From the NCBI RefSeq assembly GCF_964213995.1, contig NC_135804.1:67766001-67830000 (forward strand): DNA of 64,000 bases, given 5' to 3'. Below, piece after piece: positions 16,400 to 34,599 of this stretch. Position numbers and translations under genes: made by a program. Origin of the DNA: Mustelus asterias. Its lineage: Eukaryota. Within the stretch, counting starts at the first letter, position 1; each line of letters begins with the position of its first letter. A model generated the notes under the pieces. The model was given only the letters and a program-made list of their open reading frames with translations, made no database searches and was not told the origin of the DNA.

Positions 16400-17450
16400 T
16401 GAATCTCTTCAAAGTGTGCACGCCATCGGGAAAACAGGAATGTTTCCCGGAGGCAAATGCAGCGCTCGTCAGGCCCCATTCAGTCTATGCTAATGGTAGA
16501 TAACTCCTCTCCTTCCCCACGGGTATGTCTCTTATGTTCCGGTCCCAGCGGCGCCTAGTTCGCTGTTGTCGGGATTCAGCACTCAGACCAAATAAGAGGG
16601 AGCACCATTTTAAGCCCTCCCACCAGCACCCAACATATTTTCAGCCAGCACCAGTTTTTTTTTCCGAAGAGTTGCCCCAAGTTTCTTGGACGATGTTCGA
16701 AACCGTGGAGGAGAAGAGGGCCATCCTCTTTCCAAATGTCATGCCATGACCACTTCGTGTTCTAGCAGAAGCCTGTGATGACATGGCAGAGGAAGTAAGC
16801 TCTAACATCATTAACAGGCGGACCTTACAAATGACACAGGTTGATGAATGCCCTCCTCCGACTGTGGTTAGTACCCACCTGCCTGCTGCTGGCATCACTC
16901 CCGTCGGTATCATTTGACATTTCACCTTATATCCCTAAAAAACATCAAACGCACGAACTCCACTCCTCTCCCTCAGACTCCTGCCAAAAAATCAAAGGTT
17001 CGGCGCAGTGCTCACACGTGTATGCCATCGGCTGCCTACCTTAGTATCCTCGTCATACCGCAATCTGATAATGCCGTTCGTGTGTCTCCATCAGCTAAGA
17101 TATCCCGCAGCTGCAAGGAACACAGGAGGCGGGTATTGGTATAGCTGTGCTTCGGGCCCTTACTCCCTTTGAGGAGAGGAGCCTGGAAATAGTGGGCCCC
17201 AAAGCGAGATGTGGTAAGATGTTAGTTCGAAATGCCCCGCGGAATTTGAGACTTCCATCCACCTTTATCCACTATCTCAAGTGAATCTATCATTTCCCAC
17301 AAACCTGATATACGCCAACGGTAACACCATGTATTTACTCTTCCAGGATCTCCATCAGTGACACAGAACCATCTGATGTATTTGTCCCGTTAAAGCCGTG
17401 CTCCGGCTATCTGGCGATCGAACTCTCGACTCCAGAATTTGAAGAATTTG
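16400..17450 (+). mobile_element. Degraded Harbinger Myb/SANT-type relic
   Basis: APVFFSEE...MFETVEEKRAILFP resembles the Myb/SANT N-termini seen elsewhere in the window; heavily decayed. Confidence 0.4.
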
Positions 17451-18010
17451 AAGTTAATGGACATTTAAACCAGGCGTGACAATGGTCATGCTTAACAATA
17501 TAAAGCTGTGATATCAGATTGTCATCCATTAAAATAGAGGCAGAATATCCGGGAGGGAGTTGGAGGTGAACGGTGGTAGTAGAAGGACAGTGTGAACAGT
17601 GGAGATATAAGATGCTGAGATAGGCAGATAAATGATTCAGTCAGCCCAAAAAAATGAGATTTGGCATTTAGCTTGGCTGGGAGTCAATTTAAAAGCTTGA
17701 TATTTCAATATGATTACTTATACGAGCATAAATCTGGAACAATATCTGGACGCAGGAAAGGCAAGAGGAAATAATGTTTTCTGACGAATTAGCAGACTGC
17801 TGACTCGCCATTTCGGAATATCCAGAATGAGTGAACCGCTTTGGAGGAAATCAATGGACTTTGGAGGAAATCAATGGGCTCAGTCGTGAAATGATGTGGC
17901 ACCTGCCCCAGACGTGCTAAATCGTTTCGCAACGATATCACAAGCTGAGCACGAGAAGGATCAAGGATGGAAAACCAATTTTAAAAACCTGTGAGGTCAG
18001 AAGGCGACTA

Positions 18011-18016
18011 TTTATT
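18011..18016 (-). promoter_or_regulatory. Candidate polyadenylation signal of the IgSF receptor gene
   Basis: AATAAA on the minus strand ~520 bp after the stop codon, followed by a CA and a G/T-rich tract. Confidence 0.5.
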
Positions 18017-18538
18017 GAAAATGTTGCATTTTGAAAAATGAAAGATACATGGATATTTTCACGTCACATATCAAAGGAGGAGTTGGGAGAGGCGGGTGGT
18101 GGTGACAATGATAGCACACATAGAGATTTAAACGATTCCTGGAATGATAATCGAATGAAATCCAAATTCATGTGAGAAAATAAGATGAAACATTAGCAAA
18201 TTAAGGAGCGAATCAAGCGTATCACGTCTGGATATTGGGTAGAGCAAAGATTAGCCAATCTATTAAAATTAAAAGTAAATTAGAGTAGAAAATGACGCAG
18301 TCTTTCTTTCATGTTATCCATATATGTGGAATGGCTAGAATTCGGAAATCCGACGACGGATGAGCATGGTCAAAAGCGATGGAGTGCCTTGCGTGGAGTG
18401 AGTTTCAAGGCAAACAGGAAATCCACAAGATATATTTGGAGAAAAAATCCACCTGCGATTTTCGAAAATGTCAAAGGCCTGATGTAAAGGCAGTTACCGA
18501 GGAAAAGATACACGAAGGTGAATACATCGATTATGCAG

Positions 18539-18697
18539 TCATCGCGCAACACTTCCTTGTTTGCTTAATTTAGCTTTCGTTTTCACGGCTGCGTATGTTA
18601 ACCTTGTTTCTCCGAATGTCGTTTTTGACGATGACCTGGAACCTGCCAGATTCAGAGCAACGTAAGTCAATTTGCTCTCAGCGGTGTTCTGTCTGGT
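18539..18697 (-). CDS. Last coding exon: TRQNTAESKLTYVALNLAGSRSSSKTTFGETRLTYAAVKTKAKLSKQGSVAR*
   Basis: Acceptor TTGATTTACAG|ACC, phase 0; two consensus ITIMs (LTYVAL, LTYAAV); 159 bp to TGA. Confidence 0.85.
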   Translation of the reverse strand, partial: TRQNTAESKLTYVALNLAGSRSSSKTTFGETRLTYAAVKTKAKLSKQGSVAR

Positions 18698-21600
18698 CTG
18701 TAAATCAACGACAGGGAGTATTTTACTATTTATTAACTTAAATGTATCGAAATTGCATCAAGTTGATTTTCAATACAATCTCAAAAGCAAATTATAGCAG
18801 ACAAGATTAAAGTTTCCACGTGGGAACTGAGATTTACCTCTGCATATACCGTGTGTTCTCTGTGTTGTTTCGGCATTTCGCCACGCTTGGAACCGGTCAG
18901 ATAAAGAGCAGCGTACATCAGTTTGCCTTCGGCTGAATTTAGTTCCTTCTAGGAATTCAATGTTTAGTATTCAGTAAGTTTCATCTTTCGGACACAAAAT
19001 CTTGCATACATACATACAAATTAGAAACCGAAGCAGGCCGCTCAACCTCTAAAACCATTTTGCTATTCCTTAAGACATGTTTGATCCCCGTGTGGCCTCA
19101 ATTTCACTGTCCTTTCTGCGCCCTGAATCTCCAAGCCTTACAAACTGCCCTAATTCAGTAAGCTCCACAAACATCTACGAATTTCCGTATCGCTCTAACC
19201 TCCTACAGTTCCTTGGCATTTCCCAGCCATTATTCACAGTAGTTCTTTACTTTGTAAAAATAACAAATCAAATTAGTGTTTTTTCAGTTTTCTCTCCTGT
19301 CAATCAAAAAGTGATCGAAGTCAACCTTGAAGTAATTGAATGAATTTGCCTTCACCGCTCTCTGATTAAATCAGTTCTACAGATGCGTGGCCCACTGAGA
19401 GGGAAATAAATCAAATCTCCTCATCCTTGTCTTAAATGGTAAATCATGCTTTTTCAAACGGCATCACGTATTTTTACCCTTTGCTACAAAGTATCACATT
19501 TTTGCAACGTCCATTCTGTCAAGACGACTCAGCATTTTCTACTTTTCAAAAGATCACTTAGTCTTCTAAAGTGGAGGAGGGTACAGGCCCAATCTGTTAA
19601 AAATGTCCTCATTAAATAACACGCTCATCCCAGCAATCAATCTGGTGAAACTTCTCTTAATTATTTGAACTGAAGTTATTTTATTTCTTCATGAAGGACC
19701 AAAGCTGCGTACAATACGTTTGGGCGGGAATTTTACCGGCACGCCCACGCCGATTCCGGGGGCGGTCGCGACTCGGAGGACGGCTTCCTCCGAAGGCCTC
19801 GGGCGGGATAGTACAGACCTCGGGCGGAGGTGCCGGTCAGATTCTTCCTTCGGCACCAATTCTCAGCTGCAGCACTACACTTTATAATCCACTCCTCTTG
19901 CAATGAACGGTAACATTCCATTGGGCATCCCAGCCACTTATGCGCCTTCTCAACCATATATTTCGGTTCATATTATTGTGTTCTGATTCATGTACCGGGA
20001 CATCCGTATGTCTCTGTACATCAGAGTCTAAAATATCTTCGCATAAAAAAAATATGTTTTTTATTCTGACTGCTAAAATGGACAAATTCGCGATCTCTCA
20101 CGTCATCTGTCATTTTTTGCACACTCTTTACCTATCCGTGACCCTCTGCAGACTCCATATTTCCCCCTTGCCACTTACTCACCCATCTACTTTCTTTCAT
20201 CAACATCTTTAGCAACCATGCGTATAGTGTTATCATCCAAGTCGTTGATATCAATTGTAAATAATTGAGGATCCAAGACTGATACACATGACACTACAAT
20301 TGATACATATTTTTCCAACCAGATAAAAGGCCAAAATGTGCCTACTCTATGTTTCCTGACAGCTAGATAGTCCTTGATAGATGCTATCACCTGTGTCATG
20401 TGATCTTGCTATGTGTGGAACCTTTGATGTCGAACATGATGGAATGTCTTTTCGAAATCCACAGGATCCACAGTAACTCCACAGGTTCGGTTTTATTCAC
20501 TTTGCTTCTTACTTTCTCAAATAACTCATACATTATGTAATAATAATTTCCAGGTTACAACGCCATGTTTACTCTGCTAACCTCCATCAGATGTCCCAAG
20601 TGCCCTGTTACAACTCCTTTATTAATGGATTCCAGCATTTTCCCAATGGCAGAAGTTAAGCTAATTGGCCTGTAGTTTCTGGAATACTGTTTCCCTCCTT
20701 TCTTGAACAAAGGAGCTACATTCCCTGTTTTATTCAAATCTAATTTGTCGCTGCCAGAATCTAGGACGTTTTGAAAATTTTAATCCAAGTCATCCATTCT
20801 CTCAGCAGTTACTTATTGTAAGACCCTCGTAACAGTTGCATCATGCTTGGGAATTTTCAGATTTTTCGTTATATTATTTTTTCAGCAGCATCATCCTGCT
20901 GAAAGTAATCGTTTTATGCTCTTGCTTCCGTTTCGCATCGCGATATCCAATTATTTCTGGTATGTACTTTGTATCCTCTACAGCGATATATGTTCCGTTG
21001 ATTCTGCTTTCGCTTGATTGGCAATACTAATTCGTCAGACTCGCTCTTTGGAGGAGCAGCATATTATAAGTAGTTGCTTTTACAACACCTGTGGAAACTC
21101 TTCCGATGTGTGCTGCATATTAATAGCTAACGATCGGTCCTGCTCTGATGTTTCACTTCATTTTTAGCCATTATTCGCTGTAATTTATGCAACTTGTTCG
21201 TCTAACCTGCCAGTGAACTTCAGGGAATTGATTTTGTTTATTTCAATTTGATCCTGTTGATAACTTCCTTAGTAAGCCGCGGATAATATGTCCGTCCCCT
21301 CGAGATGTTTTGTTCTTTCTGACTCAAATGGCTGAGAATTAGAAAACATCTCCTTAAGTTTCTGATAAAAGCACGACAGCTGTGGATGCTGGAATAACAA
21401 CAGAAAATGCTTGAAAATCTTAGCAGGTTGACAGAGAAAATAGAACGAAGTCCAGACCACCCTTCGTCAGAGCTTCGTCAGATCCCTTGTCAGCATTTTG
21501 CAATGACAAAGGATCGAGTATGGAAGTAGCAAAGATCAAAGACCATTACAGCACAGAAACAGGTCGTTTGGCCCTCCAAGCTGAAATGTCAGCTTGTGAA

Positions 21601-24600
21601 AGAGAAAGACGGGCTGCCTGAACAGTATAAATAGATTTTTTTTTCTGAATCGCCTGGTGGACACATTTTTTTATTCTTAAACAAAGAATAACGGGTGATC
21701 TCATTTTAAACCGCGTAAGAAGGATAGGCAACAGTGTTGCTCTCTATTTTCGTTACCGATTCTACACTGAGATTAGAAATTTGAATTTTATTTGTAATAT
21801 AAATGCCGTGGCACGTTTTCACCATGCTGCAGCTTGGTTTGCACAACAAGAAATGCAAATCTGCGAACCTTATTCTCACTATCTTTAGTAGCCGAAAAAG
21901 GTATGTCATTTTAGCTAATATAGATGGAAAGTTAAAACTGTATTGAACTATTCAAAAAGCTGGCAGAGTTTGCAAACGCTTCGACCATTTTTCTAATTTT
22001 ACTTGTTTATACATAAAGTTGCGCTTTTACAGAAAAGGGGAAAAGTCAAGTCCAAATCCCCACATGTTTAAAAGAGATTTATTTAATGTGATGTCATTCA
22101 CCTGAACTTGAGAACACAAGTTCAGGATTGAGAACAAAATGTGCTTACCTCATCTGTACGCTGTGTAGTATTTATTGATTTTTTCTTTGCACCTGGTGAA
22201 ATTCGAAAAGGATAACGTATAAATAGCGGGCATATTTGCATTTGACCCGATGTCAATTAAGTAAAATGCAATTCATGCCAGCAAGTTATAGTGATACGCT
22301 GATTTCGTAATATATCACAAAATGTTCAAACCAAACGAATTTGTTTCGCTATCGCTTCTGTATTAAAGCTACGCAGGCACCATTGCACTATTTAAGCTAC
22401 ATTTTTATGGTTAGATAATGCAGTTCGGAAAATGAAGCTGTGAGCATTATAATGTCAGATGCTCATGTAATACTTGAGTTGAAGCAACATGTAAGTGTGA
22501 AGGTATTTTTCCGTCAGCTAATTATGCGAATTATACCAATAAGCAGCTTTGCTCCCGCTTATAGTTACTCGAATCGGATATTTTAAGATTTCGCCTACCA
22601 GTAAATTATTTCCTTCAGTGTGAAAATTCTCATTCATACCTTTGCACTTTATGACTCCAATCACTAGCATTAGGGTCAAAAATAGAATTGCAAGTACACC
22701 ACCGGACCATCCACCGACCATAAGAACATTGATTTTAGAGGGATTAGCTATCAAAATTAGAAAATGTCATGTCAGCCATATGTACACAGCTATCAATATC
22801 AAATGCATAATTTTCAATTACGCTGTGAATCGAACATCATGATACAAAATATAAAACTTCAGTACATCATTTTCATTATCGATATTTATGCAGCTGTTTT
22901 ACGAATAGTTCGAAAAAACGTGGTTGAAACATATAGATCATAGAATCCTTGAGTCGTAGAATCCCTACAGGGCAGAAGGAGGCCATTCATCCCATCGAGC
23001 CTGCACCGACAAAATTCCCACGCAGGCTCAATCCCCGCAACTCCACGTATTTACGTTTCTAAGGCCCCTGACACCAAAGCACAATTTAGCATTGCCCACC
23101 TAACACACACATATTTGGAGTATGGGAGGGAACCGGAGCAGCCGGAGGAAACCCGCGCTTTCGCAGGCAGAATGTGCAAACTCCACACAGTCATCCGAAG
23201 CCCGAATTGAACACGGGTCCCTCGCACTGTGAGGCAGCTTACCTCTGTGCAAGCCTGTTGGAGAAATAGCAGCAATGTTGAAGAAGGTGCCCATTGAATG
23301 GGCACATTCCCATTCATGACTATACAGAATGCAATCGTTTTCAACTGATTGTGCCAATCAAAAAACAATTAAAATGTTGTTCCAAGTTTCATTGCACCAC
23401 ACGCAGAAAAGGTCCAAACAAATCGCTTGAGATCATCTTTCAAGGAAAGATGCATTACCGTGTATTTACTCATCTTCTCACAATTACCTGTGACCCTATT
23501 TTTAGTCGCATTACGAGTGAGTAACAACTTTATAAATGAGGAATCAAGTTGGTTTAGTTCGTATCTGCAGCGAGATGAAAAGATTCAATTGTTCGATTCC
23601 ATAGCTCAGCGATCCATTATTTTTCAGTGCCTCGATTGAACATCGATGCTGCATCATTTTCTAAGTTGCAATTTTATGCGGTTAATCTGATTTATGGGAG
23701 CAATACTGAAGACTCAAACCCATTATTGGTTAGGTTGCATGATGCAGTCTACAACATATCCTATTTTAAAACCAAATGATTGGAAACCTTCGCCCAAAGA
23801 ATACAATAAGTTTCATCAATATATGAGCATGAAGCTACTCCAGTAATCACTTCCTATGCACCACCGTTTTTCATGCATTTTTGTGAAGGGCGAAAGACTA
23901 AAAACTATCATATTTCATATAAGATTACCTTCATCAAAAAACGTATAGCTGGCATTTGCTGGCATTGAGCTTGAAACGTGATAAACTTGACAGATATAAA
24001 CTGTGCCTTGTTCGATCGCCTGCTGTTTCAGGTTGCTGACAACTTCAAAAAGCCCCTCGGAATTTGCTTGTTGTTCATTTTGGAATCCGCTGAGAATTTG
24101 AGCACCGTTTTTATGCCAGGTGAGGTTAAATCCTTTCGGGTAAAAAGCTGCAGTTTTGCACTGGAGCCTAATAGTAGCAGATGAGATCTCTTCGGATGAT
24201 ATGGACATAATTTTCAGGGGAGCCGCTGGAGCTAAATTCAAGATAACAAGACAGATAAATTGAAAAAGTGAGCTTCTGCTCTAAAAAATTGTAATTTTAT
24301 TAATTACGTACAGCTTGTTCTTGGCAAGCAAGTTTCTTTAATAATCAGTATTTTTATATTGCTGCGCGGTGTTTTTCATAGATTTTCTAGGTCCCTCCAC
24401 CCGTACGCTATTAAAGTACTACCAGCATGTTTAGCAAAATTGACTTGCATAATTTGTCCCTCTTTATTTAAACCTATGTGTTACAGTCGGTATACTGCAT
24501 TTAAGGATTTAGCGATTGGGAGAAGGGGGAGGGCCGGGGGTAGAGGAAAGGTGATAGCGTAGCGATATTATCGCTTGGCTACTAATCCAGAAAATCAACT

Positions 24601-27600
24601 AACATTCCGGGAACTGGCAAGTGGTGGAATTTGAATTCCATTCGCAATATCTGGAACTAAGAACCGACTGACCACCATGAAACCATTGTCGATTGCCTGG
24701 GGAAAAACGCGCATCTGGTTCAGTAATGTATTTTGAGGAACGAAATCTGCCGTCTTCTCGGTCTGGTCTACACGTGACTCCAGATTCACAGCAATGTTTA
24801 TGGAGTGCTGATACTTCAGTGCAAGGAGCGTAGAAGGTAAGACAGACGAAGTTAGGGCCTTAATGCTCACGAGGAATTTGGATGTGGTTGCGGTGACAGA
24901 GACTTGGTTGAAAGAGGGACAGGACTCGCAGCTGAATATTCCGGGGTACAAGTGTTTTAGGCGAGACAGTGGAGGGGCCAAAAGAGGTGCGGGGGGGGGG
25001 GGGGGAGGTAGCAGTATTAGTTGGAGAGCATATTACTGCGGTGCAGAGGGAGGACAATTCAGAGGGGTCGTGTAACGAGTCACTCTGGGTGGAGCTTAGA
25101 AACAGGAAGGGCGCAGTCACTATGTTGGGGGTGTATACTACAGGCCCCCCAACAGCCCAAGGGAAGTGGAAGAACGGGTATGTCAGGAGATACTGGATAG
25201 GTGCAGGAAAAATAGGGTTGTTGGAGTGGGAGACTTCAATTTCCCCGGTATAGACTGGAAATCGCTGAGAGCTGGGACTCTGAATGGGGAGGAATTTGTA
25301 AAATGCATACAGGAGGGTTCTTTGGAACAATATGTAGATAGCCCGACTAGAGAGGGGGCTATACTGGACCGAGTACTGGGGAATGGGCCTGGTCAGGTCT
25401 TCAAAGTTTCCGTAGGGGAACATGTGGCAAATAGTGAACAAAATTCTGTTAGCTTTAGGAAAGTGATGGAAAAGGATGAGTGGTGTCCCAAGGGTAAGGT
25501 GTTGGATTGGGGAAGGTTAACCTTAGTGGGATTAGGCAGAAATTGGCAGCTCTTGATTGGGAGAGGCTGTTTGAGGGTAAATCCACATCTGGCATGTGGG
25601 AGTCTTTTAAGGGACAGTTGTTAGGGCGACGGGACAGGCATGTGCCTGTAAAAAAGAAGGATAGGAAGGGTAGGATTCGAGAACCGTGGATAACCAGGGA
25701 AATTGAGGGACTGATCAAAAAGAAAAGAGAGGCGTATGTTCGGTCCAGGCAGCGAAAAACGGAGGGAGCTCTGGAGGAGTACAAAGGAAGTAGGAAATAA
25801 CTCAAACGGGGAATTAGAAGGGCAAAAAGGGGTCACGAAATGTCCTTGGCAGACAGGATTAAGGAGAATCCCAAGGCATTTTATTCATACGTTAGGAACA
25901 AAAGGGTTGTCAGGGAAAAAATCGGACCTCTCAGGGACAAAAGTGGGGAATTATGCTTGGAGCCCAAAGAAGTAGGGGAGATCCTAAATGAATACTTTGC
26001 GTCGGTATTCACAAAGGAGAGGGATGTGTTGACTGGGAGTGTCTCGGAGGGGAGTGTTGAACAGTTGGAGAAAATCTCCATTACATGTGAGGAAGTGTTA
26101 GGTTTGTTGGAGAATATAAAGACTGACAAGTCCCCAGGGCCTGATGGAATCTATCCAAGGCTGGTCAGGGAGATGAGAGATGAAATCGCTGGGTCTCTGG
26201 CGCAAATCTTTGTCTCGTCACTGGACACAGGTGAGGTCCCAGAGGATTGTAGGATAGCTAATGTGGTCCCGTTATTTAAGAAGGGTAGGAAGGATAACCC
26301 GGGTAATTATAGGCTCGTGAGCTTGACGTTTGTGGTGGGGAAGTTGTTGGAGAAGATTCTTATGAAAAAGATGTATGCGCATTTAGAAAGGAATAAACTC
26401 ATTAACGATAGTCAGCATGGTTTTGTGAGAGGGAGGTCATGCCTCACTAACCTGGTAGAGTTTTTTGAAGAAGTGACTCGAATGGTTGACGAGGGAAGGG
26501 CCGTGGATGTCGTCTATATGGACTTTAGTAAAGCGTTTGACAAAGTCCCTCATGGTAGGTTGGTGAAAAAGGTTGGATCTCATGGGTAAAGGGGAAGGTG
26601 GCTAGATGGGTGGCGAACTGGCTTGGTCACAGAAGACAGAGGGTGGTAGTGGAAGGGTCTTTTTCCGGCTGGAGGCCTGTGACTAGTGATGTTCCGCAGG
26701 GCTCTGTATTGGGACCTCTGCTGTTTTTGATTTATATAAACGATCTGGAAGAAGGTGTAACTGGGGTGATCAGTAAGTTTGCGGACGACACAAAATTGGC
26801 AGGACTTGCAGATAGTGAGGAGCATTGTCAGAGGCTACAGAAGGATATAGATAGGCTGGAAATTTGGGCAAAGAAATGGCAGATGGAGTTCAATCCTGAT
26901 GAATGCGAAGTGATGCATTTTGGTAGAAATAATGTAGGTAGGAGCTATACGATAAATGGCAGAACAATAAAGGGTGTAGATACGCAGAGGGACCTGGGTC
27001 TGCAAGTCCACAGATCCTTGAAGGTGACGTCACAGGTGGAGAAGGTGGTGAAGAAGGCATATGGCATGCTTGCCTTTATAGGACGGGGCATAGAGTATAA
27101 AAGTTGGGGTCTGATGTTGCAGATGTATAGAACGTTGGTTCGGCCGCATTTGAAATACTGCATCCAGTTCTGGTCGCCACACGACCAGAAGGACGTGGAG
27201 GCTTTGGAGAGTGTACAGAGGAGGGTTCCCAGGATTTGCCTGGTATGGAGGGGCTTAGTTATGAGGAGAGATTGGGTACACTGGGGTTATTCTCCCTGGA
27301 AAGAAGGAGGATGAGGGGAGACTTAATAGAGGTGTATAAAATTATGAAAGGCATAGATAGGGTGAACGGTGGGAAGCTTTTCCCCAGGTCGGTGATGACG
27401 TTCACGAGGGGTCATAGGTTCAAGGTGAAGCGGGGGAGGTTTAACACAGATATCAGAAGGAGATATTTTACACAGAGAGTGGATGGGTCCTGGAATGCGC
27501 TGCCAGGCAAGGTGGTGGAGGCAGACACACTGGGAACGTTTAAGACTTATCGAGATGGCCATATGAACGGAGTGGGAATGGAGGGATACAAAAGAATGGT

Positions 27601-28757
27601 CTAGTTTGGACCAGGGAGCGGCACGGGCTTGGAGGGCCGAAGGGCCTGTTCCTGTGCTGTATTGTTCTTCGTTCTTTGTTCTAATGTTGTTTACTCTGAG
27701 CAAGGACAACTCAGGATGGACATTAAATGCTCGCCAGCCAGCGAAGCCCAAGTCCCACGAAGAACTAAAAAAAGAAACAATTGTTGACACCAGCCATTCA
27801 GGAATAAACGTGGATGATTGAAGCTTGAAAGGCGCCTCCAAACGTTTGGATTGTGAGCCCCACTCGCTTGTAATTCGCGAAAGGGCATTGAAAATGCAAA
27901 TATTGCGAGCGACTATAAAATTATTCATCCCGTTACAACGTTCCCACATTGAAAACGAATTTTACTTATTAGTTTTGCTTGCGTTTTGCTTGGCGAACTT
28001 CAAGTCAAGTAGCATTTTTTTAAGATAGGGATTTGATATACTTTGCAGTGTCGTTGCAACTGCAAGTTTTCCACTTTGTTGAACATCTGTTCTTCTAATC
28101 AAGTGAATGTGCTTTCAGCGCTCTGCATTTATTTATTTTAATGGTCTATTAACCTTCGTTGATTGACTCCATCTACTAAGCATGACATATTTTCAACTTA
28201 CCATATATGAGTACTTGCACCGCAATATCGTTCACAATCGTCCGACGCTGAATTTTGACTGCACAGTGATATGTTCCGGCATCCGGTATGTTGACATTCA
28301 GGAGTTGAAGGTACGCTCCACCTTTCATTATCTGGAAGCGTTTTCCGCTGTCCTCCTGCAGCAACCTCTTATTACCATCTTTCCACCAGAAAGCCGTTGC
28401 GTTTATAAAGTCGGTATGGAAAGGGAAAGGACATCGCAAGGTTACGTTTGTGCATCTGAGCGCCTTTATTGGTTCAATATCCGATGTGCCCATAGCAACT
28501 ATAAACAAAAATGAACACACACATACTAAATCATACATATGCAATAAAAGTTGATGTATACTACGAAAATAACATCACCCGTTCAGTCCACATATACCGT
28601 AACAATTTAATGTGCCTCACTGCTAGAATTATTCTCGAGTTCCAGCATTTGTATTTCGACTTGAGATTTCTAAATATGTTTTACTCACCCAGGCCCTTCC
28701 GACCACTAGGAACACGTGGCATGGCAATAAACACAATTTAAAAAAAAATAAAGACAT
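18539..28757 (-). CDS. SIRP-like inhibitory Ig-superfamily receptor (leader-V-C1-TM-cytoplasmic tail with 4 Tyr motifs), 7 coding exons, 340 aa plus leader
   Basis: Exons 28689-28757 (uncertain), 28202-28498, 23929-24231, 22640-22747, 22149-22192, 18838-18948 and 18539-18697. All introns are GT-AG. Junction phases after V, C1, TM and the two following exons are 1,1,1,0,0, keeping the frame to TGA at 18539-18541. Confidence 0.85.
18838..18948 (-). CDS. Cytoplasmic exon: KELNSAEGKLMYAALYLTGSKRGEMPKQHREHTVYAE
   Basis: Acceptor TTCCTAG|AAG, donor GAG|GTAAAT; 111 bp, phase 0-0; ITIM LMYAAL. Confidence 0.85.
18995..21360 (-). mobile_element. Old degraded CR1 LINE in an intron
   Basis: NVAPLFKKGGKQYSRNYRPISLTSAIGKMLESI and VLDPQLFTIDINDLD motifs. 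Confidence 0.75.
19721..19852. mobile_element. Short GC-rich MITE-like element with terminal inverted repeats (Harbinger-type)
   Basis: GGGAATTTTACCGGCAC ... GTGCCGGTCAGATTCTT imperfect inverted ends, inserted in the AT-rich CR1 relic. Confidence 0.55.
22149..22192 (-). CDS. Short cytoplasmic exon: (G)AKKKSINTTQRTDE
   Basis: Acceptor CCTTTTCGAATTTCACCAG|GT, donor GAG|GTAAGC; 44 bp, converting phase 1 to phase 0 as the next exon requires. Confidence 0.8.
22640..22747 (-). CDS. Transmembrane exon: (A)NPSKINVLMVGGWSGGVLAILFLTLMLVIGVIKCK
   Basis: Acceptor TTTTGATAG|CT, donor AAAG|GTATGA; 108 bp, phase 1-1; uncharged hydrophobic helix followed by basic residues. Confidence 0.9.
22945..23245 (-). 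mobile_element. HE1/V-SINE-type SINE
   Basis: Same family as 4463-4802 (GGAAACCGGAGCA..CCGGAGGAAACCC, AATGTGCAAACTCCACACAG). Confidence 0.8.
23929..24231 (-). CDS. Ig C1-set domain exon
   Basis: LQCKTAAFYPKGFNLTWHKNG...NSEGLFEVVSNL...VYICQVYH shows the C1 signatures (CxxxxFYP, W, YxCxVxH). Acceptor TTTAG|CT, donor GAAG|GTAATC; 303 bp, phase 1-1. Confidence 0.93.
24555..24798 (+). mobile_element. Ancient tRNA-derived SINE (SacSINE1-like), 5' part, split by a CR1; 3' part at ~27683-27775
   Basis: GGTGGAATTTGAATTC...CCATGAAACCATTGTCGATTG...CATCTGGTTCA...AAATCTGCCGTC...GTGACTCCAGA. Related copies lie at ~40230-40540 and ~48820-49030. The family name is from recall. Confidence 0.55.
24799..27682 (+). 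mobile_element. Young CR1 LINE (ORF2 endonuclease + RT, 5'-truncated at the ORF2 start) in the V-C1 intron, antisense to the gene
   Basis: [45 protein letters not shown] and KFADDTK motifs with several frameshifts/stops. Candidate TSD AATGTT at 24793-24798 and 27683-27688. Confidence 0.95.
28202..28498 (-). CDS. Ig V-set domain exon
   Basis: NVTLRCPF...AFWWKDG...KRF...AYLQLLNVNIPDAGTYHCAV: B-strand Cys, C-strand Trp and DxGxYxC. Acceptor TTTTTGTTTATAG|TT, donor TATG|GTAAGT; 297 bp, phase 1-1. Confidence 0.93.
28689..28757 (-). CDS. Candidate leader (signal peptide) exon
   Basis: Strong donor GG|GTGAGT 190 bp upstream of the V exon. The ATG at 28757 gives hydrophobic MSLFFFKLCLLPCHVFLVVGRAW but in phase 0. 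The ATG at 28722 (MPRVPSGRKGL) is in the correct phase 1 but is not signal-like. Confidence 0.5.
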
Positions 28758-29859
28758 TCACTTTTCCGCCAACTATGAGATCAACTTACTGTTGCGTCTG
28801 GCTCGCGAATAGTCATAGAAAACAAAATGAAAACATAAAACAGAAATCTACCTGGAAGGAAAATCGACAAAGAAACTTTGCCCCAAAGCGAACAACCCAT
28901 GACCATATGGACGCAGAGACAATGATAGATAATACGCTGAGATTATATACCGAACAGACGGATATCCGTCGGATGGGCGGCTCCGATTTGATTATAAACG
29001 ACTACTGATCAGTAAGCAAATGACAAGATAATGCTGAGTAAAACAAATGCATATCTTTTCGAACAAGATATTCCGGCGTGTGAGTGAGCTGAAGTAGTAA
29101 TGGGAAACAGAAGGCAACGATATCAAAACAGACTGGTGAGGGAGGGGCGTGGTGAATGGGACTGGTCCCGGGCGGTATCGATGAACAAATGGTAAATGAC
29201 ACGTCAAGTCCATGAATCGCCATTTTGTCAGCCACCATGGGGGAATAATATTGCAAGTCTTCACAAGATAGGTTCCCCAAATATTTGTGTTGGGTTCACT
29301 GTGGGCCTACGTTGATCGTTTAAAGTGCCATTGGTCCGAACCGTCTGGTTGATTCAGGCAGCAAACAGGTGAGAAGTGAGTAGAGCCTGTCGGATAAATA
29401 TTAATTATATTGCTTGATGCACAATTAGATTGTGGGAGATGACGCAATTTCCCGGTAATGGAATATCTGTGGAAATTTCCGAATGTGACTTCTAGTGGTT
29501 TTTGCTATTTTTCTGCGCGGAGTGTAGACTAGGGTTTTATTGAATTATGCGCGCAGTTGGAGGTGGGGCCGAGCTGGTGCTAGACCTCGCCAGTTAGCTT
29601 TTAAGCTGTCTTCGTTTCCAACTGCAGGCCTGCAGCGTCAGTTTAAGACACTCTTCTCCAAGTATCCTACGAATGAGAATAAATCCGGGACAATATACAA
29701 ATTGCTGGGTTAAAAATGAGATGTACACTTCTCACAAATCAATCAATTTAATACATTTTGCTGATACATTATATTTTCCTCTGGAGAAATTCGAACACTA
29801 TCACTAACAAGAAACTGATCTTAACATGGACTATAGATATGAAAATCAGGTATCAGGTG

Positions 29860-32800
29860 AAAGTCACAGCCAACGACACCAAAGTAGCATTTGACCGAGT
29901 GTCAAGGAGCTCTAACTTAACTGGCGTCAATGGGAATAAGAGGGAAAACGCTCCGCTGACTGGAAGCATACCGCATACCTGGCACAACAAAGGAATTTTT
30001 TGGTGAATTTAGGTCAATTATCTCAGTTCCACGACAACACTGCAGGAGTTACTCGGTGTGATGTCCTGGACCCAAACATCTTCAGCTGCTTCTTCGATGA
30101 CCTTCTTTTCATCATAAGGCCGGAAGTGTGGATTTGTTTTCAGGTGACTGCTGAATATTGACAAGAATTTGCGACTCATCAGATACTGAAGCAGTCTATA
30201 GAAAAAAATACAGCAAGGCCTACACAATATTCAGGCATTAGCTGAAAACAACAGAAAAAGAACATTCACGCCACACAAGTGCTGAGCATCTCCAAAAAGG
30301 GACTATCTAGCCTGTCAACGGTGCATGACGTTAACATCGCTGAGTCTTCCACTGTCAACATCCTGGGGGTTACTATAGAATAGAATTTGAACTGGTCTAG
30401 CCACATACAAGAGTGCTTTGCGTGGCAATTCAAAGGCTAGGTATCCTGCGGCGAGAAACTCTCTTCCTGGTTCCCCAATGCTTGCCCTTCATTTATAAGG
30501 CGCAGGTCTGGAGTGTGATGGAAGACACACCGCTTGTCTGGGTGAGTGCATCCGCAACAACATTCAGTAAGTTCCACATATTCAGGCCAATGCAGCTCGC
30601 TGGATTGCTACACCCTCCGCATCATTTCGTCCTTCTACCAGCGACGAATGCTTGCAGCCTTGTGCAGCAACTGTAAAATGCACTGCACTACAAAATGAAC
30701 GAATGTTCCTGAGGTTGTAGTGTCATCGAGAAGGCAAGAGTTGCAGATATATGCTGGAGCAGAAAAGTTCCAAGTGACTTTGGCAAAACACAAGAACTAA
30801 ACAATGATCATCTGCAATGCAAAATAATCCAACCATTGATTCTTGACATTCAATGTCATTCCCCTCAGTGAAAACCACACGACCAACATCCAAAGGGTTT
30901 TCATTTACCAGAAACTTAAGTAAACCATCCATATAAATAGTTGGCATGCACATGAAATCTGTAAAATAAAGGGGTTCATAATTTGAAGTCATACCCAGCA
31001 CAAAGTAATATGGTTGCGGTTGCAGGAGGTAAATAATCTAATCTCCTGGATATCACTGCAGAAATTCCGCAGGGCAATGTCCTCCGATGAACTGCTTCAT
31101 CAATAAGCTGTCTTCCATCATCAGGTAAGAAGTGGGATAGTTCTTTGATGTTTGCAAAAGATTCAAAATTATTCGAGGTGCTTCAGACTTTGAAGCAGCT
31201 AATGTCAAAACGGAACAGGTCCTGCACAATATCTGGGCTTGAGCAGACATCTGCCATTGGCAATACACAAGTACTAACCAATGCCCAGCTACAATAAGCG
31301 ATAATCTAACCATTGTGTATTGACATTCAATGTCATTTACTTCACCAAATTACACAGAATCAACATCCCAGGGGTTACCATTTACGAAAAATTTAAGTAG
31401 ACTTTCGTTTCAAATATTTTGGCTCCAGAAACATTTAAGAAGCTCGGGATGCTGCAGCGAGTTACTCACATGCTGACTTCCCAACGCCTGCCCACTATCA
31501 ACAAGGCATAGCTTAGGAGTGTGATGGAATATCATTTATGAACTGGATGAATGAAGCTCAAATATTACTAAAGAAGCTCAGAAACACATCCTGGAAGTTC
31601 CCCTCATCAGTCACTTTGCAGACTTGGAAATCTATTGCCATTCGGTCAAAATCCTGGATCTTTCGTCTCCCCCAGACCCAACGGCGCTGTTGGTGCACAT
31701 GTAACTTGGGGACTGCAGCCTTGCAAGAGGCAGTTCACCACCACCTTTTGAAAGGCAACTCGGGATGGTCAATAAATTTTGGCCTAACTATCGATGTCCG
31801 CAAAGCATAAGTTAAGTTACAAACTGACCTATGGTCTTCAAAGCCAGCATGAAATGTTGATGGATGCATGCTTCTCGACAACGCACTCCCAACCTCGGTC
31901 GTTGTGTACTTGAAACAACATTGATTGGAAATGCCCCAAATTGCATTGCTTATTGTTTTACCAGTTCCATCAGCTCACCGTAATTTTGACACCAGTTAGT
32001 TCAGACACTCTTTGCACAAGGCTCAATTATGTGTTATAACGTAGGCAGTTGCATGAAATCTGGAAACTAAAAGTGTTCATTATTTGTAGTAATACCCAAC
32101 ACAAAGTAATATGGTTGCGGTTGCAAGAGGTCAGTCATCTAATTTCCAGAACATCACTGCAGGAATTCCGCAGGGCCGCGTTCACAGGTGAACTGCTTCA
32201 TCAATGCCCTGTCTTCCGTCATAGGATAAGAAATGAGGAAGCTTTTTGATGTTTGCAAAAGGTTCAAAATTATTCGTACTTGACTTTGAAGCACCTAATA
32301 TCTACACAGAACAGGCCCTGGACAATATCCAAGCTTGGGCAGCGAAGTGCCAGCTGACGTTGGCAATACCCAAGTGCGAAAAAATGACTGGCTACACTAA
32401 GAAGTAATCTAATAATTGCGACTTCACATTCAGAGTAATTTCCATCAGTGAATCTCACACTATCAATATCCGAGAGGGTTACGATTTAATGGAAACTTAA
32501 GTAGACTATCCATATAAATATTTTGGCTGCAAGAACAGTTCAGAGGCTAGGGATGCTGCGGCGAGTTACTCGTCCGCTGTGTCCAGAACACCTGTCCGCC
32601 ACCAAAAAGCCATACGTCATGTGATGGAGTATCTTCTATGGTCTGGATGAATGTAGCTCAAGTATGGCTAAATAAGCTAATCGGATTCAAAAACGAACTG
32701 CCGCTTAAATTGCATCGCGTCCACAAATATTCCATCCTTCTAACATGGACGAACAGTGCAGCAATCTGTACCATGCAAAAGATGCACTGCTGTAAATTCC

Positions 32801-33125
32801 CAGAGTCTCTGAGACAGCACGTTCCAAGCTAATCACTGCTCCGATCTGGAAGGAACAGGGAAGCAGGAATATGTAAGCATCACCATCTGACAGTTTCCCT
32901 TCAAGTCACTCACCATCCTGACGTGCGACTATATCACCGTTCCTTCACTGTCGCTGGGTCAAAATCCAAAAACTCCCTCCATAACCGTACCGTGCCTGTA
33001 AATGCACCACATGGACTACAACAGTTCAATAAAGTCATTAAATCCCAAATTCTGAAGGACAATAAAGATGGGCAATAAATCCTGGACTTGCCAATTACTC
33101 CCACATCGTGTAAACTTATCAAAAA
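29860..33125 (+). mobile_element. Tandemly arranged decayed CR1/L2-type LINE 3' fragments (3-4 units)
   Basis: ACAAAGTAATATGGTTGCGGTTGCA..ATCACTGCAG.AATTCCGCAGGGC occurs at ~30999 and ~32101; ACATCC..GGGGTT and AACTTAAGTA blocks recur. Confidence 0.65.
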
Positions 33126-33479
33126 GATTTATGAAGTTCAAAGAGCTCTTGAATAACTGGTAGATATAGCAAATTTAGACTTCACAATACTTGTCCTGAA
33201 TTTTGGATTAATGGTCTGGAGGCTAAAATAAAATAGTATTTGTATTGATCGTAACTGGTGACGTTGTTTGTTGAAGTAATGTCGGAGAAAATCTGGTTAT
33301 TGAGCGGTTTTGGTAGTCAATTGCTCAGGTGTTTTGGTAGCGTTCCTTCCGTCCTTCCGCCTTAATCCTGAATATTTCATGCACACATGAATATATCAAT
33401 CTGGCAGCATCACGCAGTCATATAAAACGTAAAAAAAAGTTATTGTTAATTAGCAATAATCTTCAGTCTGATTCAGCAC

Positions 33480-34290
33480 TTTATTTGATTTGGTTTGATT
33501 TGATTTGTTATTGGCATATGAACTGGGGGAAAGTGAAGAGTTTTGTTTCTTGTGCCCTGTTCAGGCAGAACATACCGTTCATAAAATACATAGCATAAAA
33601 AGGAATAATAGGGTGCAGAATATATTGTTGCAGTTACACGTAGGGTGAAGAGAAAGATCACCTTAATAAATGATGGGCCATTCAAAAGTCTGATGATTCT
33701 GTTAATATGTGCTTTCAGACAGTTGTATCCATTTTACCGACGGAGAAAGGTGAAAAAGTGATTATCTTTTGTGTGCGGCTTCTTTCCCGAGGGAGAGCGA
33801 AGTATACAGGGAATCAATGGACAGGAAAATTGTTTGCGTTGTTGGCTAGGCGAGGGTCACAATCCTTTGTAGTTTCTTTCGGTCTTGGGCAGAGCAGAAG
33901 CCACAACAAGCAATGAAACAACCGGAAAGGATACTTTCTATGGTGCATCTGTAAAAATTGGGAAACGTCGGAGTGGAGCTACCAAATTTCCTTAAGCATA
34001 TGAGAAAGTTGCTGAGCTTTCTTAAATATAACGTCGGCTGGAGGGACCAGGACATATTGTTGATGATCAGACCACCTCGAAACCTGAAGCTCTCGACTAT
34101 CACCGCTTCATCATCGCTGATGTAGGCATGGTATATCTTCCACGACTTTCCAGAAGTCGATGACGGGCTCCTTCGTTTTTCTGACAGTGGGGGAAAGCGG
34201 AGAACAGCAAAGAGATATAGAATTTGGTGAAATGGTGCAACGACCATAACCTCGCCCTTAATGTCATTAAAACGGTGGTAATCGACTTCA
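33480..34290 (-). mobile_element. Rex1/Babar-type LINE 3' fragment
   Basis: LRKFG...NFYRCTIESILSGC...CSAQDRKKLQRIV motif; (ATTTG)n tail. Confidence 0.75.
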
Positions 34291-34599
34291 GAAAAAGATA
34301 ATAGCTAAGAAACCGACCTAAAGGAGTGACTTGAGGACAGTATTCAACTAAAATGTCGAAGCTAAGTGAATGTCAGAGGTATATCGTGTCCGCAAAATAA
34401 GTTTACTTGGTTTAAATACTGCGTGTTGTAATTATCTGGACCATTTTGTTGTCTTCTTGAAGTTTCATGATTAGCGTGGTAATGCGATTTTGTTTTGCTG
34501 TGATGTCTGTCAAATTCACTACTTTCATGCATTTGCTTCATTATTTCACGTTATTTGGGGGCCACCTGCTCGTCTAAGTGAGGTTATCAATCCCTGATT

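What the first reader, a model, noticed from the sequence alone, without database searches (positions are those of the whole stretch)
18539..28757. Hidden non-rearranging V-C1 immune receptor with four inhibitory tyrosine motifs
Seen: six exons splice in frame (GT-AG) into V-set + C1-set + uncharged TM + a ~105-aa tail with LMYAAL, TVYAE, LTYVAL and LTYAAV. The three tail exons are absent from the ORF track. Known: C1-set domains are largely limited to Ig, TCR, MHC, B2M, tapasin, SIRP and B7-H6-type proteins, and ITIM pairs recruit SHP-1/SHP-2. Inference: this is a cartilaginous-fish SIRP-like checkpoint receptor with a compact light-chain-like V-C1 ectodomain (mammalian SIRP-alpha is V-C1-C1). 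It may belong to an uncharacterised family relevant to the ancestry of antigen receptors.
Basis: partly seen in the sequence, partly recalled or inferred. Interest (0 to 1): 0.85.

Follow-up and report, generated by a model that had tools for sequence, protein, structure and literature searches.

The report
Shark SIRP-like inhibitory Ig receptor gene
This is an intact-looking gene for a cell-surface immune receptor of a shark-like fish, one member of a large family of inhibitory and activating receptors that public genome annotations already label as SIRP-alpha-like but that no paper I could find describes.

Summary
The exons are real. On the minus strand I find seven exons with GT-AG borders: leader, N-terminal Ig, C1-set Ig, uncharged TM and three tail exons. 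The Ig and TM exons are all in phase 1. All exons from the N-terminal Ig exon to the last tail exon align in order with a 357-aa Heterodontus francisci RefSeq model, at 40-60% identity per exon where BLAST aligned them.

- The likely start is a leader exon at 28906-28852, outside the given range. The MSLFFF ORF at 28757 lies in the leader intron.
- The N-terminal domain misses Pfam's V-set cut-off, folds like an I-set domain without a C'' strand, and has lost the J-like motif that the wider family keeps.
- Only three of the four tyrosine motifs fit the ITIM consensus.
- The last 11 residues depend on a one-base homopolymer difference from the DNA of two other samples.

The gene belongs to a cartilaginous-fish family of V(J)-C1 receptors. 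Some members have ITIM tails; others have short tails and an Arg-bearing membrane segment. NCBI names many of them "PTPNS1 (SIRP-alpha)-like". Tail tyrosine spacing (23/14/23) mirrors rodent SIRP-alpha (24/17/24). The C1 tree cannot separate SIRP affinity from Ig/UrIg affinity.

No RNA data were available. The scan noted similar genes elsewhere in this genome. I rate it a new variant of a known kind, of moderate interest.

The parts
28852..28906 (-). Probable leader exon: 18 codons (MVMGCSLWGKVSLSIFLP) plus 1 nt, donor CAG|GTAGAT, phase 1.
   Evidence: it is third-ranked of all ATG-to-GT phase-1 candidates in 28499-42000, and the only high scorer near the Ig exon. The two higher scorers share a poor donor 7 kb upstream. 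It has the same length as the P0012 leader, 8 of 18 residues identical, and the same terminal Pro. The junction codon gives Val, as in P0012. A TATATAA sequence lies about 35 nt upstream. There is no RNA support.
28499..28851 (-). Leader intron (353 nt).
   Evidence: The ORF's strong donor TGG|GTGAGT is in phase 0, while the Ig-exon acceptor needs phase 1. The ORF shows no similarity to homologue leaders (mean z -0.51).
28202..28498 (-). N-terminal Ig exon (V-derived, I-set-like). It carries the Cys22-Cys78 pair, a WW motif and a decayed J-like end (NDIAVQVLIY). Cys replaces a nearly invariant Gly at exon residue 15.
   Evidence: Pfam Ig_3, V-set and I-set are all below their cut-offs; 47-57% identity to 10 homologues (44% to an eleventh, P0158). 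for the invariant columns; pLDDT 89.5, strands A B C D E F G with only single-residue bridges where C' would lie, and no C''; best matches are I-set domains and the PD-L1 V domain, TM about 0.7. for the alignment.
24860..27604 (+). LINE reverse-transcriptase remnant on the opposite strand, inside the 3970-nt intron between the two Ig exons.
   Evidence: ORFs with RT-type sequence (for example YMDFSKAFDKVPH). Similar ORFs occur at 37469-38862 and 57977-60472.
23929..24231 (-). C1-set Ig exon, phase 1/1.
   Evidence: PF07654 E 1.7e-11, 44.8 bits against a cut-off of 21. Ig constant domains are the best PDB sequence matches; pLDDT 87.9. MHC class II beta2 and Ig kappa CL, TM 0.80-0.85; 53-68% identity to homologues.
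22640..22747 (-). Connecting peptide and uncharged transmembrane exon, ending in KCK, phase 1/1.
   Evidence: collinear hit to P0012 residues 229-258 (E 8e-5).
22149..22192 (-). Tail exon 1 (44 nt, about 15 codons, basic juxtamembrane stretch). It changes phase from 1 to 0.
   Evidence: best splice score, 10.8 against 4.3 or less; acceptor ...tttcaccag|, donor GAG|gtaagc; mean similarity 34.8 to the linkers of 5 homologues, against 14.4 or less for 7 other candidates.
18838..18948 (-). Tail exon 2 (37 codons, phase 0/0), carrying LMYAAL (ITIM consensus) and TVYAE (TxYxxT with the next exon's first residue).
   Evidence: 51-61% identity to the P0012, P0156 and P0157 tails; it is related to tail exon 3 (E 0.002-0.003), which indicates an exon duplication.
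18539..18697 (-). Tail exon 3 (52 codons plus TGA), carrying LTYVAL and LTYAAV (both fit the ITIM consensus).
   Evidence: 55% identity to P0012 residues 317-354.
18575..18577 (-). Homopolymer in the last exon whose length differs from other individuals. With the extra base a stop follows two codons later.
   Evidence: table 4: 'put in behind 18574: T' at full depth in X1, X2 and X3 (2 samples). X4 does not cover the site. The shifted frame was read by hand.
18011..18016 (-). First AATAAA downstream of the stop codon (about 520 nt); a possible polyadenylation signal.
   Evidence: This is a motif match only.

Best explanation
The locus encodes a type I membrane protein of about 350 residues. 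It has a signal peptide, a shortened V-derived (I-set-like) Ig domain, one C1-set Ig domain, an uncharged transmembrane helix, and a roughly 95-105-residue cytoplasmic tail built from two duplicated modules. Each module carries an ITIM ([L]xYxxL) followed 23 residues later by a second tyrosine.

The gene is one inhibitory member of a large multigene family restricted to cartilaginous fish. The family consists of non-rearranging V(J)-C1 receptors. It also contains short-tailed members with an Arg-bearing membrane segment, which are presumed activating partners. This is the same paired layout as SIRP-alpha and SIRP-beta.

Inferred mechanism: when the ectodomain binds its unknown ligand, Src-family kinases phosphorylate the tail tyrosines. 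Each tyrosine pair then docks the tandem SH2 domains of SHP-1 or SHP-2, which dampens activation of the cell carrying the receptor.

Shown here: gene structure, domain types, family membership, motif content and motif spacing. Inferred only: expression, phosphorylation, phosphatase binding, ligand and cell type.
For: Gene model:
- GT-AG borders and phases fit.
- Five exons (the N-terminal Ig, C1, TM and tail exons 2 and 3) hit one 357-aa Heterodontus francisci model in collinear order. Tail exon 1 is supported separately and the leader. My model sums to 358 aa.

Domains:
- C1-set by Pfam and by fold.
- Ig fold of the N-terminal domain at pLDDT 89.5.

Family:
- The C1 exon searched against 1.84 billion representatives gave 543 hits at E 0.001 or better.
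- With a family HMM, 79 of 184 held proteins score 90 bits or more, and the rest score 57 or less.
- The family plus the window form one clade with support 100.
- Of the 79, 34 have at least one ITIM-consensus motif after the C1 domain. Five have an R...(D/E)H membrane segment and no ITIM (sequences).

SIRP likeness:
- NCBI names.
- Rodent SIRP-alpha is the best hit outside cartilaginous fish.
- Human SIRP-alpha ranks fifth among PDB chains. It is the best that is not titin, an antibody chain or UrIg2. It scores 59.5 bits over the V end plus d2, and 39.0 bits over d3.
- Tail tyrosine spacing is 23/14/23 against 24/17/24.
- Short matches link TYVALNL to TYADLNL, HTVYA to HTEYA, and LTYA to LTYA.

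The locus is present in the DNA of three samples of the organism, and no stop or frameshift is listed in the C1, TM, tail-1 or tail-2 exons (50 further differences were not shown).
Against: - No RNA run holds the stretch. The four runs laid are DNA, so no exon junction is observed.
- The homologues used as guides are themselves predicted models.
- The leader exon rests on 8 of 18 identities and position alone.
- Signs of relaxed constraint in this copy: Cys in place of a nearly invariant Gly, loss of the GxGT J-like motif, and a 3' homopolymer difference.
- TVYAET fits neither the ITIM nor the ITSM consensus.
- By ectodomain alone, Ig light chains score as high as SIRP-alpha: 66.7 and 65.7 bits against 59.5.
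- In the C1 tree, the SIRP-type sister group has support of only 80. Rodent, lungfish and coelacanth SIRP rows fall elsewhere.
- Forcing the family together with all SIRP-named rows is rejected (p-AU 0.0008; this group was badly posed). Forcing it with Ig/UrIg2-like rows is not rejected (p-AU 0.21).
- ITIM plus a second tyrosine about 23 residues later is common to many inhibitory receptors and is not specific to SIRP (recalled knowledge).
Confidence: 0.72

Rival explanations
1. The copy is a decaying or silent member of the family, an unexpressed young pseudogene whose reading frames are still open.
For: - Cys replaces a nearly invariant Gly before strand B.
- The J-like GxGT motif kept by most of the family reads NDIA here.
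- The reference differs from 3 of 3 covering runs by one base in a coding homopolymer. It also differs from all four runs at a nonsynonymous site, 18843.
- The locus is full of LINE remnants.
- There is no RNA evidence.
Against: - All seven exons are open with canonical splice sites.
- Both Ig cysteine pairs and the core Trp residues are kept.
- Both domains fold with high confidence.
- The closest subfamily members, which are RefSeq models, also have weakened J motifs, so that change is a subfamily trait.
- The homopolymer difference only alters the last 11 residues, downstream of every tyrosine motif.
Confidence: 0.15
2. The family is a branch of the antigen-receptor/UrIg lineage (non-rearranging VJ-C1 genes) rather than of the SIRP lineage, and its SIRP-like tail arose by convergence.
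For: - The family profile scores Ig lambda and kappa chains (66.7 and 65.7 bits over V plus C) at least as high as SIRP-alpha V-d2 (59.5). UrIg2 also ranks among the top PDB chains (E 1.5e-31 summed).
- A clade of the family with Ig/UrIg2-like C1 domains is not rejected (p-AU 0.21).
- Most family members keep a canonical GxGTxLxV J-like motif.
- NCBI names one member 'T cell receptor beta chain-like'.
Against: - In the free tree the nearest neighbours are SIRP-type C1 domains of turtle, lizard, frog and a characiform (support 80).
- The best named hits outside cartilaginous fish are SIRP proteins.
- UrIg and UrIg2 have three or more C domains and no ITIM is reported for them. The word ITIM is absent from PMC12227049.
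- The N-terminal domain lacks the C'' strand.
Confidence: 0.18
3. It is a B7/butyrophilin-type ligand (an IgV-IgC1 ectodomain presented to another cell's receptor) rather than a signalling receptor.
For: - Pfam C2-set_3 (butyrophilin Ig-C) matches at E 3.8e-6, 27.2 bits against a cut-off of 27.
- PD-L1 and CD276 are among the sequence and fold matches of the N-terminal domain.
- NCBI names some relatives 'NCR3 ligand 1-like'.
Against: - C1-set scores much higher (44.8 bits).
- The tail carries three ITIM-consensus motifs conserved across the family.
- Paired short-tailed forms with a charged membrane segment are a receptor trait.
- The family consensus has a J-like motif.
Confidence: 0.05

Closest known systems
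SIRP-alpha / SHPS-1 (PTPNS1) and the SIRP paired-receptor family of bony vertebrates
   Same: - Non-rearranging Ig receptor with an N-terminal V-type domain followed by a C1-set domain and an uncharged TM.
- Tail with four tyrosines in two tandem modules at nearly the same spacing (23/14/23 against 24/17/24).
- Sister genes with short tails and a basic residue in the membrane segment.
- Best named hit outside cartilaginous fish.
   Different: - One C1 domain instead of two.
- The N-terminal domain is shorter, without a C'' strand, and in this gene without the J-like motif.
- The second tyrosine of module 1 reads TVYAET rather than TEYASI.
- Sequence similarity in the tail is limited to the motifs.
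- Orthology is not shown. CD47 binding is unknown.
Predicted cartilaginous-fish proteins such as Heterodontus francisci XP_067905931.1 (P0012), Stegostoma tigrinum 'PTPNS1-like' (P0157) and Rhincodon typus XP_048462082.1 (P0003)
   Same: Same exon order and domain layout. Identity is 48-55% in the N-terminal domain and 60-68% in C1. The tail modules match, and the total length matches (357 against 358 aa).
   Different: They come from different species and may be paralogues. The window's copy has LMYAAL where P0012 has LMNASL. It also has an extra Cys and a more decayed J region.
UrIg and UrIg2 (non-rearranging shark VJ-C1 genes; PMC12227049, abstract, section 7 and term searches read)
   Same: Germline-joined V-type exon, C1-set domains, found in elasmobranchs. 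The family profile matches the UrIg2 crystal chain 9dmx.
   Different: The paper describes nurse shark UrIg2 as a VJ domain plus nine C1-type domains, and UrIg as having several C domains. The term ITIM does not occur in the paper. Here there is one C1 domain and an ITIM tail. Per-domain scores are lower than for SIRP-alpha (46.4 against 59.5).
Immunoglobulin light chains and TCR chains
   Same: V-C1 two-domain ectodomain. The family keeps a GxGTxLxV J-like motif. Profile scores are as high as for SIRP, and the C1 fold matches Ig kappa CL.
   Different: - There is no recombination signal. The G strand is encoded in the same exon and the exon ends in a splice donor.
- The tail has ITIMs.
- The N-terminal domain is I-set-like.
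Teleost novel immune-type receptors (NITR)
   Same: Multigene family of non-rearranging V-type receptors with J-like motifs and with inhibitory and activating forms (recalled). Grass carp NITR13 is a profile hit at E 7.6e-16.
   Different: As I recall, NITRs lack a C1-set domain; I did not check this here. The hit covers about a third of the query.

Membership tests
Cartilaginous-fish V(J)-C1 paired-receptor family (RefSeq models named 'PTPNS1-like', 'SIRP beta-1-like' and similar) | C1 domain scoring at family level against the family HMM, and falling inside the family clade | tested here: met
   The window's C1 exon is 53-68% identical to members. The family plus the window form one clade with SH-aLRT 100. 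Family scores are 90 bits or more, against 57 or less for all 105 other proteins with a C1 hit.
Cartilaginous-fish V(J)-C1 paired-receptor family | Collinear leader, Ig, C1, TM and modular tyrosine tail | tested here: met
   Every exon aligns in order to P0012.
SIRP family (SIRP-alpha type) | V-C1-C1 ectodomain | tested here: not met
   Only one C1 exon lies between the N-terminal Ig exon and the TM exon. There is no further Ig-like exon in the window.
SIRP family (SIRP-alpha type) | N-terminal V-set domain with a J-like GxGT motif | tested here: not met
   Pfam V-set scores 22 bits against a cut-off of 26. The model has no C'' strand. The motif reads NDIA in this gene, although most of the wider family keeps GxGT.
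SIRP family (SIRP-alpha type) | Cytoplasmic tail with four tyrosines in two ITIM-containing pairs | tested here: met
   The motifs are LMYAAL, TVYAE(T), LTYVAL and LTYAAV. Their spacing is 23/14/23, against 24/17/24 in rodent SIRP-alpha P0169. The second motif is not canonical.
SIRP family (SIRP-alpha type) | Orthology (tree or synteny with the SIRP locus) | tested here: inconclusive
   The sister relation to some SIRP C1 domains has support 80. The clade with all SIRP-named rows is rejected, but that group was badly posed. The alternative grouping with Ig/UrIg2-like rows is not rejected. No neighbouring marker gene lies in the window, and homologue loci could not be fetched.
SIRP family (SIRP-alpha type) | Binds CD47 and recruits SHP-1/SHP-2 | not testable with these tools
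   This needs binding and pull-down experiments.
Pfam C1-set (PF07654) | Score above the gathering cut-off and a C1-type fold | tested here: met
   44.8 bits against 21. Foldseek finds MHC II beta2 and Ig CL at TM 0.80-0.85.
Pfam V-set (PF07686) | Score above the gathering cut-off; C' and C'' strands | tested here: not met
   22 bits against 26. Only 12 residues lie between strands C and D. The best fold matches are I-set domains.
Rearranging antigen receptors (Ig/TCR) | V exon ending in a recombination signal, with separate J segments | tested here: not met
   The exon runs through strand G and ends in G|GTAAGT. The only CAC[AT]GTG match is inside the YHC codons at 28268.
UrIg / UrIg2 | VJ domain followed by several C1-type domains | tested here: not met
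   There is one C1 exon. The description of UrIg2 is taken from PMC12227049 section 7.

The most novel reading that the evidence does not exclude
The family is the cartilaginous-fish survivor of an ancient lineage of non-rearranging VJ-C1 receptors. That lineage stands between SIRPs and the Ig/TCR/UrIg antigen receptors. In it, paired inhibitory (ITIM) and activating (charged-TM) signalling was already attached to a light-chain-like VJ-C1 ectodomain before or around the time of the RAG invasion. If so, the family would be a living model of how a pre-rearrangement antigen-receptor precursor signalled. The equal profile scores to light chains and SIRP-alpha and the unresolved C1 tree leave this open.
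Probability: 0.15. Interest if true: 0.8.

Novelty: new variant of a known kind. Interest (0 to 1): 0.42.

Why it matters
SIRP-type receptors have long been discussed as relatives of the ancestor of antibodies and T-cell receptors, because they combine a V domain carrying a J-like motif with C1-set domains (recalled background). Sharks are the oldest lineage with rearranging receptors.

A large shark and ray family with a light-chain-like V(J)-C1 ectodomain would be useful in two ways. It has both inhibitory and putative activating forms, and its tail is laid out like that of SIRP-alpha. First, it gives comparative immunologists a concrete set of genes for testing whether paired signalling on a VJ-C1 scaffold predates the split of cartilaginous and bony fish. 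Second, it could show what such receptors recognise.

This single gene adds one member, and it shows how the N-terminal domain can drift (J motif lost, extra Cys) while the tail modules are kept. In eight literature searches I found no paper describing the family. The proteins are, however, already in RefSeq under automatic SIRP-like names, so the surprise to a specialist would be moderate.

Tried and rejected
Its strong donor is in phase 0, and it does not resemble homologue leaders.
- In-exon ATG (MYDLVCVCSFLFIV...) as an unsplit leader: considered, and not supported beyond composition (mean z 0.08). It was superseded by the 28906 exon.
- Direct TM-to-tail-exon-2 splice at an internal cag|cc acceptor: considered. 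It was rejected because tail exons 2 and 3 are homologous from three codons upstream of N(S/T)AE, which fits the phase-0 acceptor, and because tail exon 1 matches the homologues.
- Paralogues inside the window: none. tblastn of each exon gave only self hits, plus the match between tail exons 2 and 3.
- RNA evidence: the look-up of sequencing runs listed no RNA holder. Read laying on 18500-24300 showed DNA contigs covering introns and exons alike. Its joints fall in repeats, not at exon borders.
- Rfam on 17000-30000: no match.
- Tandem repeats: only a 20-bp minisatellite at 1025-2038.
- AU test of the family plus all 22 SIRP-named rows: rejected (p 0.0008). The group was badly posed. It left out frog and characiform rows that nest among the SIRP rows, and it included weak first-domain hits that are probably V domains. 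I therefore do not read this as evidence against SIRP kinship.
- Literature searches found no paper on SIRP-like V-C1-ITIM genes of cartilaginous fish. Searches (term PRARP; loose min_terms) were poorly designed and returned noise.
- Fu et al. 2019 (PRARP genes, pmid 30770416) and the 2023 UrIg paper (PMC10530332) are not held. What I say of PRARP and NITR is recalled.
- I did not ask for supplements. The supplementary gene tables of PMC12227049 and PMC10751288 might list such genes, and I did not see them.
Every search and fold used single exons by reference, or natural homologues.

Full report
**What is in the sequence**

The finding lies on the minus strand. Reading the DNA and checking borders and phases by script gives seven exons.

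| Exon | Coordinates | Length | Phase in/out |
|---|---|---|---|
| Leader | 28906-28852 | 55 nt | 0/1 |
| N-terminal Ig | 28498-28202 | 297 nt | 1/1 |
| C1 | 24231-23929 | 303 nt | 1/1 |
| TM | 22747-22640 | 108 nt | 1/1 |
| Tail 1 | 22192-22149 | 44 nt | 1/0 |
| Tail 2 | 18948-18838 | 111 nt | 0/0 |
| Tail 3 | 18697-18539 | 159 nt, ends in TGA | 0/- |

Every internal border is AG...GT. The lengths sum to 1077 nt, or 358 codons without the stop. I built no joined sequence and searched with none. Every search and fold used single exons or natural homologues.

The intron between the two Ig exons (3970 nt) holds a LINE reverse-transcriptase remnant on the other strand.

**Is it more than chance?**

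Yes.

- The C1 exon passes Pfam C1-set at E 1.7e-11, 44.8 bits against a cut-off of 21.
- Searched alone against 1.84 billion representative proteins, the C1 exon found 543 proteins at E 0.001 or better. Among them are single-domain matches of 60-68% identity in proteins of 212-412 residues.
- The N-terminal Ig, C1, TM, tail-2 and tail-3 exons hit one of these proteins, P0012, in the same order at residues 28-122, 126-225, 229-258, 279-315 and 317-354. P0012 is Heterodontus francisci XP_067905931.1, 357 aa.
- The 44-nt tail exon 1 is the best splice-scored phase 1-to-0 candidate between the TM exon and tail exon 2 (10.8 against 4.3 or less).
- Of 8 candidates tested, tail exon 1 alone resembles the homologues' juxtamembrane linkers (mean score 34.8 against 14.4 or less).

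**The start of the gene**

Its good donor is in phase 0, but the Ig exon's acceptor needs phase 1. Neither this ORF nor an in-exon ATG resembles the homologues' leaders beyond composition (mean z -0.51 and 0.08).

I scanned all ATG-to-GT phase-1 candidates up to 42000. The exon at 28906-28852 ranked third.

- The two higher scores share a poor donor 7 kb upstream.
- Its 18 residues have the same length as the P0012 leader, with 8 of 18 identical.
- It ends in the same Pro, and the junction codon gives Val as in P0012.
- It contains the SLWG motif of P0162 and other homologues.

I take it as the leader exon. This rests on similarity only.

**Domains**

C1 exon:
- Its model has pLDDT 87.9.
- It superposes on MHC class II beta2 and Ig kappa CL domains at TM 0.80-0.85.

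N-terminal exon:
- Its model has pLDDT 89.5, with strands A, B, C, D, E, F and G, only single-residue bridges where C' would lie, and only 12 residues between C and D. There is no C'' strand.
- Its best structural matches are I-set domains (myosin light-chain kinase, titin, obscurin-like, IgLON) and the PD-L1 V domain, at TM about 0.7.
- Pfam V-set, I-set, Ig_3 and ig all fall below their cut-offs.

In the family alignment most members end this domain with a canonical J-like N-G-T-G-x-x-L-x-V. The subfamily nearest the window has weakened versions, and the window reads NDIAVQVLIY. The window also has Cys where 90% or more of members have Gly before strand B.

The exon runs through strand G into a splice donor. 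The only heptamer-like match lies inside the YHC codons. The gene therefore does not rearrange.

**The tail**

Tail exons 2 and 3 are related to each other (E 0.002-0.003).

- LMYAAL, LTYVAL and LTYAAV fit the ITIM consensus.
- TVYAE is followed by the first residue of the next exon, T, giving TxYxxT. Relatives have TVYAET, TVYAQT, TVYAKI or TEYAGI at that place.
- The four tyrosines are 23, 14 and 23 residues apart.
- In rodent SIRP-alpha (P0169) the four tyrosines are 24, 17 and 24 apart (hand count).
- Sequence similarity to the SIRP-alpha tail is confined to the motifs.

**Variation in other individuals**

No RNA run holds the stretch. The four runs that hold it come from three samples. 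They cover introns as well as exons, so they are DNA, and they show no joints at exon borders.

The runs do show the locus in other individuals, with several differences from the window:

- All three runs covering the site (two samples) have one more base in a coding homopolymer at 18575-18577.
- With that base, a stop follows two codons later. The protein then ends at the same distance after the last ITIM as P0012 and P0157 do.
- The window's last 11 residues are therefore an allele or an assembly slip.
- Nonsynonymous differences occur at 18687, at 18843 (all four runs), and at 18918 and 18941 (one run each).
- One synonymous difference occurs at 23945.
- Fifty further differences were not listed.

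**The family**

With a family HMM, 79 of 184 held proteins score 90 bits or more on C1, and all the others score 57 or less.

Named members come from Heterodontus, Stegostoma, Hemiscyllium, Chiloscyllium, Rhincodon, Cetorhinus, Scyliorhinus, Heptranchias, Pristis, Hemitrygon, Mobula, Amblyraja and Callorhinchus.

NCBI's automatic names vary widely:
- 'tyrosine-protein phosphatase non-receptor type substrate 1-like'
- 'signal-regulatory protein beta-1-like' and 'gamma-like'
- 'tapasin-related protein-like'
- 'natural cytotoxicity triggering receptor 3 ligand 1-like'
- 'H-2 class II ... beta chain-like'
- 'T cell receptor beta chain-like'
- 'uncharacterized'

Of the 79 family-level proteins:
- 34 have at least one ITIM-consensus motif after the C1 domain, and 17 have two or more.
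- 5 have an R...(D/E)H membrane segment and no ITIM.
- 10 are cut models.

Short-tailed forms (P0160, P0162, P0163) sit in the same C1 subclade as the window (support 94). That pattern is expected for paired inhibitory and activating receptors.

Earlier unchecked notes of this scan report similar genes 15.5 kb beyond this window, about 0.8 Mb and 8-9 Mb away, and on other pieces of the genome. I did not verify those.

**Relation to known families**

Evidence pointing to SIRP:
- Rodent SIRP-alpha is the only hit outside cartilaginous fish for P0012 at E 1e-10 or better.
- It is also the best such hit for the family profile (E 1.6e-31). A frog Ig-like protein and grass carp NITR13 follow.
- Of the 20 non-family hits I had named, 7 are SIRP-like proteins of lungfish, coelacanth, turtle and lizard.
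- In the PDB, human SIRP-alpha ranks fifth for the family profile.

Evidence against a specific SIRP link:
- Per-domain scores are no better for SIRP-alpha (59.5 bits over the V end plus d2) than for Ig lambda or kappa chains (66.7 and 65.7). UrIg2 scores 46.4.
- In a quick ML tree of 78 C1 rows, the family is one clade (support 100) on a long stem.
- Its sister group is eight C1 domains of turtle SIRP-alpha, a lizard SIRP-alpha-like protein, a frog protein and a characiform protein, at support 80 (not starred). Rodent, lungfish and coelacanth SIRP rows fall elsewhere.
- Holding the family together with all SIRP-named rows is rejected (p-AU 0.0008). That group was badly posed.
- Holding it with Ig/UrIg2-like rows is not rejected (p-AU 0.21).

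The SIRP resemblance therefore rests on architecture, on the tail and on hit ranking. It does not rest on a resolved phylogeny.

**Literature**

UrIg and UrIg2 are the published non-rearranging shark VJ-C1 genes. I read the abstract and section 7 of PMC12227049, and passages of PMC10751288. These genes have many C domains. The terms SIRP and ITIM do not occur in either paper.

Searches combining SIRP or 'signal regulatory protein' with shark, cartilaginous fish, ITIM or C1-set found no paper on this family. Searches for non-rearranging C1-domain genes returned only the UrIg papers.

The PRARP paper and the 2023 UrIg paper are not held. I did not see any supplements.

**Verdict**

The gene is an apparently intact inhibitory member of a cartilaginous-fish family of V(J)-C1 paired receptors.

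- It is not a strict SIRP: it has one C1 domain, an I-set-like N-terminal domain, and unproven orthology.
- It is not hidden at family level, because RefSeq models exist.
- Its function is inferred from motifs only.
- I rate it a new variant of a known kind, of moderate interest.
- The open question worth pursuing is where this family stands between the SIRPs and the antigen-receptor lineage.

Noticed in passing
window 18575-18577 (and 18687, 18843, 18918, 18941): The reference differs from DNA contigs of other samples by one base in a coding homopolymer of the last exon, and at four nonsynonymous sites in the tail exons. Two of the alternative residues (Ser at 18687, Arg at 18941) match what P0012 has at those places.
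   Followed up: partly
window 22768-23349: An intronic stretch with summed contig depth up to about 360,000-450,000 in runs where neighbouring bins have about 50. This indicates a very high-copy repeat, perhaps a SINE. Rfam at the gathering threshold found nothing there.
   Followed up: partly
window 24860-27604 (+), 37469-38862 (-), 57977-61341 (-), 62138-62787 (-), 9189-9551 (+): Several LINE remnants of one kind, with closely similar reverse-transcriptase ORFs. The copy at 57977-61341 has long open frames, including an upstream ORF at 60802-61341.
   Followed up: no
window 1025-2038: Minisatellite of about 50 copies of a 20-bp unit (91% matches).
   Followed up: no
window 42818-43499: GC-rich stretch (57% G+C) with long overlapping open frames on both strands, rich in Gly, Trp, Pro and Ser. 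It looks like low-complexity repeat DNA rather than a gene. Tandem Repeats Finder at score 150 did not report it.
   Followed up: no
proteins P0018 (Amblyraja), P0004, P0159 (Hemiscyllium), P0156 (Heterodontus): Family members vary by recent internal duplication. P0018 has two nearly identical C1 domains (V-C1-C1). P0159 and P0004 look like fused tandem genes. P0156 repeats the two-tyrosine tail module twice, giving four LTYAAL motifs.
   Followed up: partly
window 28941-28947: TATATAA about 35 nt upstream of the proposed start codon at 28906. It is a possible core promoter element and would imply a very short 5' UTR.
   Followed up: no
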